Shown one piece after another: positions 11,152 to 38,365 of a stretch of 64,000 nt of DNA. A program made the position numbers and the translations under genes. How positions within the stretch are numbered: the first letter of the stretch is position 1; every line of letters begins with the position of its first letter. Under the pieces are notes generated by a model. It had not been told where the DNA came from. It made no database searches and saw only the letters and a list, made by a program, of their open reading frames with translations. The DNA comes from Iphione sp. A-MEVVRFRX5. Its lineage: Eukaryota. Location of the stretch: contig OZ320323.1 of the NCBI GenBank assembly GCA_976226885.1, forward strand, positions 49,662,001 through 49,726,000, read 5' to 3'.

Positions 11152-11301
11152 CTTTTGTAGGACCTCTCCAGCCTCTCCTTCTCATACTGATGTTGCTTAA
11201 TGTCTCGGATGACAGAGAGCAAAACGTTCTCGAAGAGGGTGGTGAGGTGGGGTATCTGCACATTATGAATGCTCTGGTAGAGCTCACACACATGCTCCTG
11301 G
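11152..11301 (-). CDS. RASEF: RASEF common exon (QEHVCELYQSIHNVQIPHLTTLFENVLLSVIRDIKQHQYEKERLERSYK), 150 nt, phase 2-2
   Basis: Acceptor cttcttttccag, donor AAG|gtaacc; resembles RASEF EQVSTLYQNI...YEHVIRNFIREI segment (recalled). Confidence 0.92.
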
Positions 11302-11382
11302 CTGGAAAAGAAGAAGTCGAAAGACAATTCAGTCTAACTCATACTGTAAATTTATACATGTACCTATTGTTTAAAATCTCAA

Positions 11383-11590
11383 ATGACAGAGAACAAGAGG
11401 TGGTGAGGTGGAGATCTAGTAGGACTCACACATGCTCCTGGCTGGAAAAGAAGAAATTATAAAAGGCACATCAGTCTAACTATTCTAGTAAATTAATCTG
11501 GGTACCTATATATATTTACACATCGGATCTGATGTGCACATTACGAAAGTTCTGGAAGAGCTCACACTTGTATATGTTCCTGGCAGTAAC
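11383..11590 (-). pseudogene. Two decayed tandem copies (~140-bp period) of the acceptor and 5' part of the common exon
   Basis: CACACATGCTCCTGGCTGGAAAAGAAGAA repeated at ~11427-11455 with intact acceptor (11442-11444); a more degenerate copy at ~11530-11585. Confidence 0.85.
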
Positions 11591-11929
11591 ATCGGTCGAA
11601 ATGGTCCAACTACTGGAGTAAAATAATTCAGCTACCTGCATAAATGTACACGTCTATGCAGGTACATGCACAAATCTGAACCTAGACTCCTGAAAAGAAA
11701 CTCAGAAGCTCCGAATTTAACATAATACATGTATCTGATGAACATTTAAGGAACAAAAAAATATGTCGGATATGAGGGGACGACTGTATTGAACATCATG
11801 TGCAAAAATAGTCAGTGAATAATGTTCTAGAAATAAACTCAGGCTTGTGTTGATGTACTGTACTAATAACATTCTGCTTACACAGACACTGCCAAGTGAT
11901 CCTGGTTCACAAAGCAATGTCCTCAAATT

Positions 11930-12305
11930 ATGCTTGTCCCCCGCTCTCAAGTGGCCATTTCGTGCCTGATTGCACCTCACTTGGTCAGACTGCTACAAGG
12001 TGGCACTGGTAGAAGGGTGGGTGGGTGAGTGAGTGAGTGAGTGAGTAAGTGAGTAAGTGAGTCAGTGTGTGTATGTATGTATTGTCAGACGTAGAAATCC
12101 CCAAACAAGGTGTGCATATTTGTGGATGTGTTAGCAAAAGAGCAAACTGACATTATTTTACTTTTAAAATCAGTTTCTTTGACAGAAGGGTCTCAGAGTG
12201 ATAAGACCCACAAGAGTGTGTCAGAAGGTCAGATGGTCAGACAGCAGTATTCCTAGCCCCCCGCCCCCCTCCCCACTCTATGAGGCGGGGGGACAACAAC
12301 AAAAA
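11930..12305 (-). mobile_element. HINE/DINE-1-like non-autonomous element, copy A
   Basis: TTGTCCCCCGC...GCGGGGGGACAA subterminal inverted repeats, internal (GTGA)n/(GT)n tract, conserved GTGGCCATTTC(A/G)TGC(T/C)TGATTGCACC block shared with 12895, 30450, 43624. Class assignment is inference. Confidence 0.7.
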
Positions 12306-12894
12306 ACAATTGAGAGACTTTGAATCACCATGCTCAACCGGTTGCGGTGGTTACTGCCACCCAGTCATCCAGCAGGTATTCCAATAGAGGTGCGGTACCA
12401 GAGAGGAAGCGTAATTCTTTGTACAATGGTTAAAAACATCATTCGTACAGCGCCTGTTCCCCATCGCTCATGATTGTACCCAGTCAGTGGGTCAGTCACG
12501 TCGATCAGCGATGGAATGTAAGCCAAACCAACCACATGAGGGTGAATTGTGCTGACTTGACATTATGACTTGCAATGCTAGAATACGGCGCTTACACTCA
12601 GTATTGGGGTTTGTATGATAAGATGAATATGCACAGATGAATGAGTATTTGTATCCGCCTGGCTAAAACGAAACTTAATTCATCCCAGTGACAAACGGAC
12701 TAAAAAAAATAGTTGGTGACAATGTCAATGGACATACATGATGCCCCTACAACTGTTTTGAGCATATTTTTGGTTAGCTGGATTCATTGTTGAATGTGAC
12801 TTTCAGACCCAGTATACAGTCAAACACTGAATTACGGACCATTGTCCTTTTCCAAACTGCTCTCATTTCCAGTCTTATCCAAAATGTGGATTCA

Positions 12895-13145
12895 AAGAAG
12901 AATGTGGACCTGCAAGGTCTAGTGTCCCCCCGCCATTAACTGACCATTTCATGCTTGATTGCACCTGCCTTGGTGGGTGAGTGGCGGTGGGGGTATGTGA
13001 GAGTGCTTCTCTTGCTAGCTACAAGGCGGTAGTAGTAGAAGGGAAAATGGTGGGTGTGTTAGTTTGTGTGTATTTGTGAGTGCACTGTCAGACCTAGAAA
13101 TCCACAAACAAGGTATGTATGTTTGTGGGTGTGTTAGCAAAAACG
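12895..13145 (-). mobile_element. HINE/DINE-1-like element, partial copy B
   Basis: GGACCTGCAAGGTCT hairpin plus TGTCCCCCCGCC plus CCATTTCATGCTTGATTGCACC; other end absent. Confidence 0.65.
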
Positions 13146-35381: not shown

Positions 35382-35528
35382 CAGTTGAACCCCTATTTGC
35401 AACCACTAATGTGGTCGTAAATAGGATATCAAATGTATAGAAATAAACATTTCAGTACCCATCCCAGGTGGATGCAATTTATAGACAATGGACGCAAAAC
35501 GATGTGGTCACAAATAGGGTTTCGACTG
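35382..35528. mobile_element. TA-flanked MITE with ~25-bp imperfect TIRs
   Basis: TA|CAGTTGAACCCCTATTTGCAACCAC...GTGGTCACAAATAGGGTTTCGACTG|TA. Confidence 0.8.
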
Positions 35529-36601
35529 TATGGACCTATTGGTGACTTCACCCCAAGCTTTCCACTGTAAAGTGACGGAGCTCTTAATGAAACCGGCCCA
35601 TGAACCTTCCTCACCTAAACATACCAAATTTAGTAAAATATATGTATTTCCTTATCTCTTTTTCAACCTCACTGGAATAAGAAATCTGAATTATTCCTAA
35701 AACTAACTTTCACCTTTCTTCACGTGTTGTGTCGAGTGCACCCCACGTGTTGGTTCATCCAGTTCCGCGTAGGAATGTAAAGATATCGATTAGATCATGA
35801 TGGTTTCACAGAAATTTACCCCACAGACTTGACGTCATAGCATCTGTTCTACTACACCCGCAGATGACTTATACAAAAGAAATATCGATTTTTTGTTTCT
35901 TCTTCTTTCCTGGATGAGGACAACGTATTTTTCTATACCCGGCACAGTTAAAGCGTAGTAAAGTATTAGGGGAGAAAAGGAGAAATGTAAAACGTTTTGT
36001 AAAATGTAAAACGTTGAGCGACCAAATGTTACTCGGTAAATTATATCGCTGGCGAGTGACCTTCACTGATGTCTCCAATAGTAATAGATTAAAAAAGACG
36101 GAAAGGAAATGAACAGAGTTCGATCCATAGGTTAAAAAAAATTGTGAACTAAAGACGTCTAAACTTCATGAACTAAACTGGTACACAGTTTATTGACACG
36201 ATCATTTCAGGTTGTGTAAAGTAGTGTCACGAAATGTTGGTACATGGCAATGCCTGATGTGAACAGTTGAAAAAATAGATTTTCGATTTAGGTACATGAA
36301 ATCTTACACGTTATCTCATGATGCTGACTGCCTATGTTTTGTTTTTGAAATTACGTGTTGAAATTTTTTACTAGATGTCTCTAACATGGACACGAACTCC
36401 GCTGGAGACAATTTCGTGAAAACACCTATATAATTAACTCATTCATTAAAACTTCTTATTATCCTGTTTGAAATGATAAGTGCATGTATATCACTTATAC
36501 CCTGATTATTTTTTCCCATGAAATGAACATAACAGCCTGTACTATAGACATGGAACATGTCAGGGGAGGCTAGTTCCAGTAAATTTTACTAGGAAGCGTA
36601 C

Positions 36602-36660
36602 GTGTCCTCGGCGGTGTCCGCATCAGGGCGCCACCGCCGGCTGTCAGCTGAACTACGCAT
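36602..36660 (-). CDS. Candidate alternative first exon (MRSSADSRRWRPDADTAED), phase 2
   Basis: ACTATG context; CpG-rich patch that ends exactly at donor AC|gtacgc; 59 nt = 19 codons + 2. Confidence 0.45.
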
Positions 36661-37446
36661 AGTAGTACAGAAAAGTGGGTCGTGCGCGGACAACTCCACG
36701 TAAACCTGCCCGGGTGTATAATTCCCCCAGCACTGAACTGTGTTTAGAGCAGACCAACCGTTTAAAAAAATAATATCTACGTCATAAGGAGATTCAGGGA
36801 GAGGAGTCCACATAGGCGGCAAGTGGCTACTGAAAGCATCGAGCAACTAACAACCCGGACTGAATAAAGAACGTGTACTCCTTTGTATGTGATACATGTA
36901 TATACAGTCCAAAGCCGATACATTGTATCTGTGAGCGATGTGCCTTATGCGACCACTTGTGCTGGGAATGGAGGGGTGGTTGCAAATAGGCATTCTACTG
37001 CATATGCACGTGTACATGCATGTAGATAGGGATGCATTCGCAGATGAGGCGTGTGCAACTTTGTTTTCATAATTGATTAAGTAGAAGAAGAGTAGCGAGA
37101 AGAGGAGGGAGAGACGGTCGGTTGTGGTCACTGGTTTGTGAGGACTGGGGAATTCTATACACATGCACGGGTTGCTCTCTTGGTAAGCTACGCAAACACG
37201 TTCTGACACACATAATTATATGAACATGTATAATGTATTCAACTTATATTGGCAGGAAGAAACGTACATGAATATTTCAGGACGAGAAAGGGGTGACCCG
37301 TCACCTATACTTAAATCAAAAACAGAAGAAAAATCTCTGTATCTGCATACATCTGGGACGCACAGTAAGCAAGGAATATGGTTTTTTTTTCTCATCAGTT
37401 CTCTCTCATTTTTGTCCTGAATATTGCACTGGAACTGTCTCCTTAC

Positions 37447-37648
37447 CTGCTCAGTATTGTGAAATCGTCATCAAGAGAGAGCAGGAAGTCTCGCGTGCTC
37501 TCGGCGTCCAGGTCACCGCCGTAATCCTCGCGAGAGGACGCGCGTCGCCGCCGTAGCTCCCCCTGGCGGTCTCCGTCACTACTCAGACTGCTGACCAGAC
37601 GGTCTTTGCGCTTGAGCTGGCTGAGGCTAGTCAGCTGGTCCGTGAATT
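37447..37648 (-). CDS. RASEF: Second exon of distal EF-hand module A (EFTDQLTSLSQLKRKDRLV...RDFLLSLDDDFTILS), phase 1-2
   Basis: Strong acceptor ctcttttttctgcag and donor CAG|gtaagg; 202 nt open; ends in phase 2 like exon 30865. Confidence 0.88.
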
Positions 37649-38139
37649 CTGCAGAAAAAAAGAGAGGAAGAGGATACTCATTTTAACCGTAAGACACAGA
37701 GGTCATTACAGACAACGCGACTTAAGCTGGCTGAGAAAGGTCAGCTTGTCTAAAATAAAATAATTTGAAGAATAGTCATTGTAACAGTACCGAAAGGAAG
37801 GTACGTGTACATGGATTTAATAAAAAATACTATTTGGCTGGTTAATTCCGGTGAACTGGTCGACGAAAGTTAATAGACGAGAGATTTTAGAAATAATTGA
37901 CCCAAATGCTGTATACTGATTTTGTTGAAAGATAAACAAACAGAGGGACATCTAATGAAAATAAAATAAGAGATAATAGGCATATAGGCGGAAAAATTCC
38001 GTCAAGAAAATATATGTTCGATACCATACTGGGTAGCACTAGAGCTCAAAATGCGACACGAGACTACTAAGGTGGCTAATTTCCTAGAGAAACCTGGAGA
38101 GTGGGAGTGAGGTGCGGACGAGAAAATCGAAGACCAGAC

Positions 38140-38365
38140 CTTTAAATCCCTCGGAGAACTCGGTGATGGAGATCCGGCCGTCGCCATCTTTGTCCAGTTC
38201 CCGGAAGACGTCGGCGACTTCGTCGGCCGACAGGTCCGTACAGAACGACGCCAACTCGCTCTCGTCGATGAACCCTGACCCGTCAAGGTCACACGCCGAG
38301 AAGAGCTCCCCCAGGCGGTTGGGCGACGAAACACAGGGGCTCGACGTCACCGCTTTGAACGCCAT
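38140..38365 (-). CDS. RASEF: RASEF distal first coding exon, EF-hand pair A (loops DLDGSGFIDESE, DKDGDGRISITE), phase 1
   Basis: GCAAGATGG start 5 nt after acceptor ttaacgtccag; 75 codons; donor AAG|gtctgg (weak consensus, but phase matches exon 37648). Confidence 0.88.

What the first reader, a model, noticed from the sequence alone, without database searches (positions are those of the whole stretch)
11152..38365. RASEF-like gene with two different EF-hand modules as alternative N-termini
Seen: two separate ATG-initiated EF-hand pairs on the same strand. Module A (38365-38140 plus 37648-37447) and module B (31265-30865) both end at phase-2 donors (AG|gtaagg, AG|gtaaag). Both join exon 11301 in frame (DFLLSLDDDFTILS-S-QEHVCELY versus AFVADLDLGYYLISPG-S-QEHVCELY). 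I found only one set of coiled-coil exons, and none between A and B. Known: RASEF/RAB45, RAB44 and CRACR2A/RAB46 are EF-hand + coiled-coil + Rab proteins, and RASEF normally has one EF pair. Inference: the sensor domain was duplicated inside the locus and is chosen by alternative promoters, giving interchangeable Ca2+-sensor heads on one Rab body. I know of no description of this arrangement, but could not search.
Basis: partly seen in the sequence, partly recalled or inferred. Interest (0 to 1): 0.9.

Follow-up and report, generated by a model that had tools for sequence, protein, structure and literature searches.

The report
RASEF gene with swappable calcium-sensor heads
This invertebrate RASEF (Rab45-like) gene carries three alternative start exons, two encoding different EF-hand calcium-sensor pairs and one encoding none, all fitted to join the same body, so promoter choice probably decides which head the trafficking protein wears.

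Summary
On the minus strand, module A (38365-38140 plus 37648-37447) and module B (31265-30865) each start with ATG and encode an EF-hand pair. Both end at phase-2 GT donors that fit the acceptor of exon 11301-11152.

The layout is old and conserved. Gap-free contigs of a sister species and of two more distant species show the same order on one strand: A, then B, then the common exon. No body exons lie between A and B.

A is not a relic. Its EF core is 57/59 identical to the sister species despite about 0.5 synonymous differences per site (pN/pS 0.06).

An intronless 768-residue ORF on a JGI contig joins an A-type head directly to the common exon, the coiled coil and a Rab domain. That Rab domain's best solved-structure match is human RASEF. 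Another species' protein joins a B-type head to the same exon.

A third, EF-less start exon (18555-18449) is also conserved in place and phase.

A-type loops are canonical in 14/14 sequences. B-type loops vary.

Still missing: RNA from this species, and the Rab exons, which lie outside the window. The assembly gaps all sit inside the B-to-common-exon intron and touch no reading frame.

The scan also noted this stretch and the third exon in other notes.

The parts
38140..38365 (-). Exon A1: ATG-initiated first coding exon holding the A-type EF-hand pair. Both loops are canonical. It ends at the phase-1 donor G|gtctgg.
   Evidence: It is 57/59 identical to the sister-species exon, with pS 0.49 and pN/pS 0.06. 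It carries the top CpG o/e peak of the window.
37447..37648 (-). Exon A2: the A-type linker (RRRRAS) and tail (DFLLSLDDDFTILS). Its acceptor is ctgcag|aa (phase 1) and its donor is AG|gtaagg (phase 2).
   Evidence: A counterpart with the same phases exists in the sister species. In L001 and L005 it is fused with A1 into one exon.
30865..31265 (-). Exon B: a single ATG-initiated first coding exon with the B-type EF-hand pair. EF1 has Gln at loop position 12 and EF2 has Asp. It also holds a Ser/Pro-rich linker and the tail AWEAFVADLDLGYYLISPG. Its donor is AG|gtaaag (phase 2).
   Evidence: B-type orthologues occur in many species. It carries the second CpG o/e peak of the window.
18449..18555 (-). 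Exon E3: a third alternative first coding exon without EF-hands. It has ccaccATGG and 35 codons (...QEWSTENLRIDLLLLEMFCQQGET). Its donor is TT|gtaagt (phase 2).
   Evidence: It is the only ATG ORF of at least 30 codons with a consensus phase-2 donor in the intron, and a 62%-identical match lies in the syntenic place of the sister species. The sister-species copy has the same TT|gt split codon. pN/pS is 0.41.
11152..11301 (-). Common exon C1 (QEHVCELYQ...LERSYK). Its acceptor is ttccag|c, which accepts phase-2 donors. Its donor is AG|gtaacc.
   Evidence: It is 90% identical in the sister species with the same acceptor phase, and 56% identical to L009 residues 179-228.
9368..9458 (-). Coiled-coil exon 2.
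7538..7633 (-). Coiled-coil exon 3.
6679..6863 (-). Coiled-coil exon 4.
6260..6328 (-). Coiled-coil exon 5.
5789..5879 (-). Coiled-coil exon 6, with the family motif DANKKLHDTNDDLRAAL. This is the last exon mapped. The linker and Rab exons were not found in 1-5788.

Best explanation
The window holds the 5' two-thirds of a RASEF/Rab45 orthologue whose N-terminus is chosen from three alternative first coding exons laid out in a row.

The three heads
- A (two exons): a strictly canonical EF-hand pair plus its own linker and tail.
- B (one exon): the RASEF-type EF pair, with variable, partly non-canonical loops.
- E3 (one small exon): no EF-hands, only a short tail-like peptide.

Each starts with its own ATG in a good initiation context. 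Each ends at a phase-2 GT donor that fits the single acceptor of the common exon at 11301. From there the coiled-coil body follows, and beyond the window the Rab domain.

What is shown
- The exon anatomy and phases.
- Conservation of order and phases in other species.
- Purifying selection on all three heads.
- Spliced A-to-common and B-to-common products in other species.

What is inferred
- Each head has its own promoter, and transcription start decides the head.

Functional inference
- RASEF and CRACR2a are dynein adaptors with EF-hands.
- The A head probably gives a Ca2+-responsive adaptor.
- The B head probably gives a weakly Ca2+-responsive or Ca2+-indifferent one.
- The E3 head probably gives an isoform that lacks the EF pair altogether.
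For: Anatomy
- Exon anatomy, phases, ATG starts and upstream in-frame stops.
- Both modules are EF-hand pairs and are paralogous.

Same architecture elsewhere
- L001 has A at 9282, B at 15073 and the common exon at 17255, all ATG-initiated and phase 2, with no N.
- L005 has A at 6623 and B at 10001. A stop lies 21 nt before B's ATG and there is no acceptor.
- Sister-species contigs L045, L003, L047 and L046 carry A1, A2, B, E3, C1, cc2 and cc3 without gaps.
- One more assembly shows the pattern by its gene list only.
- No body exons lie between A and B.

A-type and B-type are distinct conserved classes
- They differ in a 2-residue linker indel, in loop position 12 of EF2, and in tails and donors. 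A-type ends TG|GT; B-type ends AG|GT.
- A well-supported branch (95/99) sets all 14 A-type rows apart from the B-type rows, but Haliotis and Nematostella EF pairs fall inside it on a long branch.

Selection
- pN/pS is 0.06 for the A1 core, 0.33 for the B core, 0.20 for the B tail and 0.41 for E3. The flanking intron cannot be aligned.

Spliced products
- L009 carries one 768-aa ORF: A-type head, common exon, coiled coil, Rab domain, C-terminal CC.
- That ORF maps exon by exon onto the window.
- Its Rab domain best matches PDB 2p5s (RASEF) at 2.3e-61, against 3.8e-40 for Rab8A.
- P0132 has a B-type head joined to the common exon.

Other
- The two highest CpG o/e peaks of the window lie on A1 and B.
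- Rab45 binding to dynein-dynactin is Ca2+-insensitive, while CRACR2a requires Ca2+ (PMC6504896).
- Large Rabs are known to have isoforms with and without the EF domain (PMC8303950).
Against: - No transcript data from this species were available. The junctions 37447>11301, 30865>11301 and 18449>11301 are unobserved here.
- L009 and P0132 come from different, unidentified species. No single species has yet shown both spliced forms.
- L009 is taken to be mRNA-derived only because its ORF is intronless. A retrogene is not excluded.
- P0132 is not on record in the gene-position index, so whether it rests on RNA or on a gene model is unknown.
- The Rab domain is not in the window.
- Three gaps lie in the B-to-common-exon intron, so contiguity rests on synteny.
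- High CpG o/e could partly reflect the codon make-up of these GC-rich exons.
- The Ca2+-dependence of either head is untested.
Confidence: 0.8

Rival explanations
1. Module A is not part of the RASEF transcript. It is a small stand-alone EF-hand gene, or a decaying remnant of a 5' duplication, that happens to lie upstream.
For: - No RNA from this species was available.
- In several species the A-type ORF stops right after the boundary codon (W then stop). A stand-alone gene would also show this.
Against: - That stop is what a TG|GTAAGT or TG|GTGAGT donor produces.
- Where the DNA was read (window, L001, L005, sister species), GT follows the phase-2 boundary. The read-through residues of the other A-type ORFs fit the same donor.
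- The L009 ORF joins an A-type head to the common exon and the Rab body.
- The A1 core has pN/pS 0.06, so it is not decaying.
- The A tail resembles the segment that precedes the common exon in cnidarian homologues.
Confidence: 0.05
2. A and B are used together. A1 (phase-1 donor) splices to a cryptic acceptor just upstream of B's ATG (cacag|AA at 31315/31314). This would give a protein with two EF-hand pairs in tandem, as in cnidarian homologues.
For: - The join is in frame in the window.
- The sister species has in-frame acceptor candidates upstream of B and an unusually long open stretch of 267 nt.
- Nematostella, Actinia and Hydra homologues have two to four EF pairs in one chain.
Against: - The acceptor positions differ between the window and the sister species.
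- In L005 a stop lies 21 nt before B's ATG with no AG in between. In L001 no acceptor has the needed phase.
- A has its own conserved tail and phase-2 donor, which are pointless in such an isoform.
- L009 carries the A head alone.
- The phase match has a one-in-three chance.
Confidence: 0.1
3. The arrangement is an assembly artefact: a mis-scaffolded join across the gaps, or a collapsed or duplicated haplotype, places two first exons in front of one body.
For: Three N runs lie between B and the common exon.
Against: - A and B are only 54% identical and belong to different conserved classes.
- Gap-free contigs of three other species show the same order.
- The gaps are flanked by CT-rich simple repeats typical of unresolved low-complexity sequence.
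Confidence: 0.03

Closest known systems
RASEF / Rab45 (large Rab GTPase; dynein activating adaptor)
   Same: - It has an EF-hand pair, then a helical/coiled-coil region with the ...NKKLHD.NDDLR... motif, as mapped in the window.
- The orthologue L009 adds a C-terminal Rab domain whose best solved-structure match is human RASEF, and a CC prenylation end.
- Mammalian Rab45 has a short isoform lacking the EF domain (PMC8303950). This parallels exon E3.
   Different: - Described RASEF genes have one EF pair. Here a second, more conserved and fully canonical EF-hand head (A-type) is an alternative first exon.
- From memory only, vertebrate RASEF resembles the B-type. This was not checked with a tool.
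CRACR2A/Rab46, CRACR2B/EFCAB4A and Rab44
   Same: - Same family architecture.
- The ESM Atlas features of the L009 N-terminal half match EFCAB4A/RAB44 clusters at 0.95-0.96.
- CRACR2a is the Ca2+-dependent dynein adaptor (PMC6504896). The A head might behave this way.
   Different: - Their known isoforms differ at the 3' end (with or without Rab) or by loss of the EF domain. None swaps one EF pair for another.
- Haliotis EFCAB4B-like isoforms all share one head.
Variable-first-exon gene clusters (UGT1A, clustered protocadherins)
   Same: There is a row of paralogous first exons. Each has its own start and a donor of one phase, and each is joined to one set of constant exons. The promoter chosen decides the domain used. 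This comparison rests on general knowledge.
   Different: - Only three heads are present, and one is unrelated in content.
- The swapped domain is a cytosolic Ca2+-binding and probable dynein-binding module, not a substrate-binding or adhesion domain.
Cnidarian EFCAB4B/RASEF homologues (Nematostella, Actinia, Hydra)
   Same: Same body and common-exon equivalent. More than one EF pair is encoded at the locus.
   Different: There the two to four EF pairs are in tandem in one polypeptide. Here they are mutually exclusive starts.

Membership tests
RASEF/Rab45-type large Rab GTPase | N-terminal EF-hand pair | tested here: met
   Pfam EF-hand_7 scores 2e-15 for A1 and 1.6e-12 for B.
RASEF/Rab45-type large Rab GTPase | Helical/coiled-coil region after the EF pair, homologous to family members | tested here: met
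   - Window exons C1 to cc6 align to L009 residues 179-402 at 54-71% identity.
- They also align more weakly to cnidarian proteins.
- The ESM Atlas places the L009 N-terminal half with EFCAB4A_helical clusters.
RASEF/Rab45-type large Rab GTPase | C-terminal Rab GTPase domain of RASEF type | tested here: inconclusive
   - No P-loop or DTAGQE motif occurs anywhere in the window, and the gene runs off the window.
- The orthologue L009 has Pfam Ras at 2.9e-51.
- Its best PDB match is RASEF 2p5s at 2.3e-61.
RASEF/Rab45-type large Rab GTPase | C-terminal cysteine prenylation motif | not testable with these tools
   The 3' end lies outside the window. L009 ends in ...SPCC.
Alternative-first-exon (variable head / constant body) locus | Two or more first coding exons, each with its own ATG and unable to be entered in frame from the exon upstream | tested here: met
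   - In-frame stops lie 15 nt upstream of A's ATG and 60 nt upstream of B's ATG.
- A's phase-2 donor cannot enter B in frame in the window, L001 or L005.
- E3 has ccaccATGG.
Alternative-first-exon (variable head / constant body) locus | All heads end at donors of one phase that fit a single common acceptor | tested here: met
   - In the window the donors are AG|gt (A2), AG|gt (B) and TT|gt (E3), joining ag|C.
- The same holds for A, B and E3 in the sister species.
- L001 shows the same for A and B. In L005 both donors are phase 2, but the common exon was not reached.
Alternative-first-exon (variable head / constant body) locus | Separate promoter for each head | tested here: inconclusive
   The two highest CpG o/e peaks of the window lie on A1 (1.38) and B (1.32), against a median of 0.60. 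No CAGE or RNA data were available.
Alternative-first-exon (variable head / constant body) locus | Transcripts carry one head each, joined to the common exon | tested here: inconclusive
   - L009 shows the A head joined to the common exon with no B.
- P0132 shows the B head joined to the common exon.
- These come from different species. This species was not tested.

The most novel reading that the evidence does not exclude
One RASEF gene makes, by promoter choice, three dynein-adaptor Rabs with different calcium logic.

- The A head would be Ca2+-gated. Its loops are canonical in 14/14 sequences and it is under very strong constraint.
- The B head would be Ca2+-indifferent or Mg2+-tolerant. 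It often has Asp or Gln at loop position 12 and evolves fast.
- The third form has no EF-hands.

This would do within one locus what vertebrates do with separate genes: Ca2+-dependent CRACR2a versus Ca2+-insensitive Rab45.
Probability: 0.3. Interest if true: 0.75.

Novelty: new variant of a known kind. Interest (0 to 1): 0.6.

Why it matters
EF-hand dynein adaptors are the only known route by which calcium directly switches dynein transport. Why Rab45 ignores calcium while CRACR2a needs it is unresolved.

This is a natural locus where two diverged EF-hand heads, and a headless form, are swapped onto an identical coiled-coil and Rab body. That gives a ready-made, evolution-tested domain-swap experiment.

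The A-type head is more strongly conserved than the canonical RASEF-type head. It occurs in 17 A-type sequences found here: the window, 12 database ORFs and 4 further loci. Most come from unnamed environmental or host-associated assemblies. Two full-text literature searches found no description of it.

It also warns annotators that the first EF-hand exon of RASEF-like genes may be one of several.

Tried and rejected
- The bacterial promoter/terminator scan is irrelevant to a eukaryotic locus.
- The ESM Atlas search with A1 alone gave only generic EF-hand clusters.
- PDB sequence searches with A1 and B gave calmodulin lobes, which is not diagnostic.
- Two profile searches of the protein database used a long anchor protein plus window exons. 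They returned only cnidarian and Haliotis relatives. The words seem to be drawn from the first row, so no full-length protein of this species or its close kin was reached. Haliotis EFCAB4B-like isoforms share one head and belong to another paralogue.
- P0132 is not on record in the gene-position index. P0135 lies on a 978-nt contig. The contig of P0197 has no DNA held.
- L034, from the same sample as L009, is an unrelated multi-EF protist protein.
- Pfam found nothing in six other long ORFs of the window.
- Accession numbers of the source samples are not in the paper library, so the organisms remain unnamed.
- The tree of EF pairs has few columns. A-type monophyly excluding Haliotis and Nematostella is neither shown nor rejected (AU p 0.29).
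- No repeats span the gaps.

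
Full report
**Observation**

On the minus strand, 38365-38140 opens with ATG and translates to an EF-hand pair (Pfam EF-hand_7 2e-15).
- An in-frame stop lies 15 nt upstream of that ATG.
- The exon ends at G|gtctgg (phase 1).
- It continues at the acceptor ctgcag|aa into 37648-37447, which ends at AG|gtaagg (phase 2).

The exon 31265-30865 is a single ATG-initiated exon with a second EF-hand pair (EF-hand_7 1.6e-12).
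- An in-frame stop lies 60 nt upstream.
- The exon ends at AG|gtaaag (phase 2).

Exon 11301-11152 has the acceptor ttccag|c with one leading base.

The two EF pairs are 54% identical over 56 residues.

**Assembly gaps**

The N runs at 19155-19326, 22060-22358 and 22402-22651 all lie inside the intron between exon B and exon 11301.
- No reading frame crosses them.
- They are bordered by CT-rich simple sequence, and no repeat spans them.
- Contiguity cannot be shown from the window itself. I left the gaps unfilled.
- Gap-free contigs of other species show the same exon order (see below).

**What the gene is**

No P-loop or DTAGQE motif occurs anywhere in the window. The Rab domain, if any, lies beyond position 1.

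A scan of JGI metagenome contigs with an alignment of A-type modules returned L009. This is a 4204-nt contig with one uninterrupted 768-residue ORF, made of:
- an A-type EF pair, a linker and a tail;
- then, directly, ...CQENVCDLYQQLH..., the equivalent of exon 11301;
- the coiled coil;
- a Rab domain;
- a C-terminal CC.

The window splits the first 402 residues of this ORF into nine exons (A1, A2, C1, cc2-cc6), so L009 is most simply a spliced mRNA. L009 maps onto the window exon by exon (boundaries):

| Window exon | Coordinates | Identity to L009 |
|---|---|---|
| A1 | 38365-38140 | 53% (B only 40%) |
| C1 | 11301-11152 | 56% |
| cc2 | 9458-9368 | 55% |
| cc3 | 7633-7538 | not reported by the search |
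| cc4 | 6863-6679 | 56% |
| cc5 | 6328-6260 | 67% |
| cc6 | 5879-5789 | 71% |

The L009 Rab domain matches Pfam Ras at 2.9e-51. Its best solved-structure match is human RASEF (2p5s) at 2.3e-61, far ahead of Rab8A at 3.8e-40. The locus is therefore a RASEF/Rab45 orthologue. The Rab part is shown only for the orthologue.

**The arrangement is conserved**

Module B as a query found many single-exon B-type ORFs from other species. All read through an AG|GT boundary. It also found an A-type ORF, P0128.

Genomic contexts:
- **L001** (17.3 kb, no N). A' has its ATG at 9282, is a single exon and ends at TG|gtcagt. B' has its ATG at 15073 and ends at AG|gtagat. The common exon has the acceptor ttcag|t at 17255.
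- **L005.** A has its ATG at 6623 and ends at TG|GTAAG. B has its ATG at 10001 and ends at AG|GTAG.
- **ERZ26222911.** An EF-hand ORF lies 3.2 kb upstream of the B-type ORF. This is known from the gene list only.
- **Sister species (ENA ERZ25767047, two haplotig contigs, no N).** It carries A1 with the same phase-1 intron after ...EGFK, then A2 ending at TG|gtgagt. B lies 11.7 kb downstream of A1. Then come a small EF-less exon, the common exon (90% identical, acceptor cag|C), cc2 and cc3.

In the window, L001 and L005, no common-exon-like, coiled-coil or Rab-like exon lies between A and B. So A has no body of its own.

B cannot be entered in frame from A's phase-2 donor in any locus. In L005 a stop lies 21 nt before B's ATG with no AG in between.

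**A and B are distinct, old classes**

The evidence comes from alignments and a loop table.

A-type:
- The stretch between the two loops is two residues shorter.
- GF....ETL follows EF2.
- The linker holds an RRxS site.
- The tail is ...LFDLVGSLDEGFTALT, followed by a TG|GT donor.
- Both loops are canonical in 14/14 sequences. EF1 has D, D/N, S and E at positions 1, 3, 5 and 12. EF2 has D, D, D and E.

B-type:
- It has LCADLELT..EF, then GF.SV..LF, and the tail AW..F..DL.LGYYLLS followed by AG|GT.
- EF1 is variable.
- EF2 has Asp at position 12 in 14 of 20 sequences.
- In the window, B's EF1 is DPSGSGFIERSQ, with Gln at position 12.

A tree puts a well-supported branch (95/99) between A-type and B-type. 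Haliotis and Nematostella EF pairs fall inside the A side on a long branch. With 68 columns the deeper order is unresolved.

Twelve A-type ORFs from the protein database, plus L005, L008, L009, L045 and the window, show that the A head is widespread.

**Selection**

Values are for the window against the sister species.

| Region | Amino-acid identity | pS | pN/pS |
|---|---|---|---|
| A1 EF core | 57/59 | 0.49 | 0.06 |
| B EF core | 59% | 0.76 | 0.33 |
| B tail | 67% | 0.93 | 0.20 |

- The intron after A1 cannot be aligned.
- A is thus the most constrained head, not a relic.
- B evolves fast. B' of L001 is the longest branch of the tree.

**A third head**

Exon 18555-18449 has ccaccATGG and 35 codons, and ends at TT|gtaagt (phase 2).
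- It is the only ATG ORF of at least 30 codons with a consensus phase-2 donor in the 19.5-kb intron.
- The sister species has a counterpart in the syntenic place between B and the common exon. It is 62% identical over 29 residues.
- Both copies have the same TT|gt split codon, with many synonymous differences. pN/pS is 0.41.
- It encodes no EF-hand. This parallels the EF-less short form of mouse Rab45 (PMC8303950).

**Spliced evidence for both heads**

- L009 shows an A-type head joined to the common exon.
- P0132 (280 aa) shows a B-type head joined to the common exon and cc2. P0135 is the unspliced genomic ORF of the same species.
- The basis of P0132 is unknown.

**Promoters**

The two highest CpG observed/expected values of the whole 64-kb window fall on A1 (1.38 at 37751-38250) and on B (1.32 at 31001-31500). 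The median is 0.60, and the common exon scores 0.45.
- This fits two unmethylated start regions, though the codon make-up of these exons may contribute.
- All three ATGs have a purine at -3 and G at +4.

**Mechanism**

Shown:
- Three ATG-initiated heads share one donor phase and one acceptor.
- They are conserved in order, phase and coding sequence.

Inferred:
- Each head has its own promoter, and transcription start selects the head.

Functional inference:
- Rab45 and CRACR2a are dynein-dynactin activating adaptors built from an EF-hand pair plus a coiled coil.
- CRACR2a needs Ca2+ and intact loops, while Rab45 binding is Ca2+-insensitive (PMC6504896).
- The invariant canonical loops of A and the variable loops of B suggest a Ca2+-gated form and a Ca2+-indifferent form of one adaptor, plus an EF-less form. 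This is untested.

**Rivals**

- *Stand-alone or relic A.* Against it stand the GT read after the boundary at the four loci whose DNA was examined, the L009 ORF and the pN/pS of 0.06.
- *A1 spliced to a cryptic acceptor before B (31315/31314).* This is in frame in the window and reminiscent of cnidarian proteins with tandem EF pairs. It is impossible in L005 and L001 and not positionally conserved.
- *Assembly artefact.* This is excluded by the divergence of A and B and by synteny in gap-free contigs.

**Comparison with the known, and novelty**

- Known isoforms of large Rabs add or drop the EF domain or the Rab domain (PMC8303950). None swaps one EF pair for another.
- Two full-text searches found no description.
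- In logic the locus resembles variable-first-exon clusters such as UGT1A and the protocadherins (general knowledge).
- I rate it a new variant of a known kind, of moderate to high interest. Direct RNA evidence in this species is still needed.
- The scan's other notes on this stretch agree with what I tested here: s1-327865 on loop differences and s1-327852 on the EF-less exon.

Noticed in passing
L047:16198-16323, and protein P0132 residues 148-246: The common exon has a degenerate second copy about 450 nt downstream in the sister species (40% identical). P0132, from another species, carries two near-identical copies of it in tandem. This could mean tandem exon duplication or mutually exclusive exons in some lineages. 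The window has only one copy.
   Followed up: no
window 31314-31325 (minus strand): The acceptor-like site cacag|AA lies 50 nt upstream of B's ATG, just after an in-frame TGA. It would join A1's phase-1 donor to B in frame and give a four-EF-hand protein. It is not conserved in L001 or L005.
   Followed up: partly
window 37520-37560 (exon A2) and alignment A5: The A-type linker keeps a basic RRxS/RKxS site in most species (RRRRAS in the window). Many also have RRKS just before the tail. This looks like a conserved basophilic-kinase phosphorylation site specific to the A head.
   Followed up: no
Proteins P0113, P0152-P0154: Cnidarian homologues carry two (Nematostella, Actinia) or four (Hydra) EF-hand pairs in tandem in one polypeptide before the common-exon equivalent. 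Multiplied EF pairs at this locus are therefore old, but are deployed differently.
   Followed up: partly
window 19040-19154, 22359-22401, 22652-22700: All three gaps in the finding are bordered by CT-rich simple sequence (ctccctcc...). This suggests unresolved low-complexity tracts rather than scaffold joins.
   Followed up: partly
L046 and L047 (ENA ERZ25767047, ctg38198 and ctg38637): The sister-species locus is present on two long contigs. The B, E3, C1, cc2 and cc3 exons match the window equally well on both (same scores), but the intron lengths differ. These are probably two haplotypes of one animal in a metagenome assembly.
   Followed up: no
window 40450-41031, 52555-53103, 59095-59883, 62032-63129 (minus); 54092-54559, 13638-14102 (plus): Six long ORFs elsewhere in the window have no Pfam match at E<=0.01.
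   Followed up: partly
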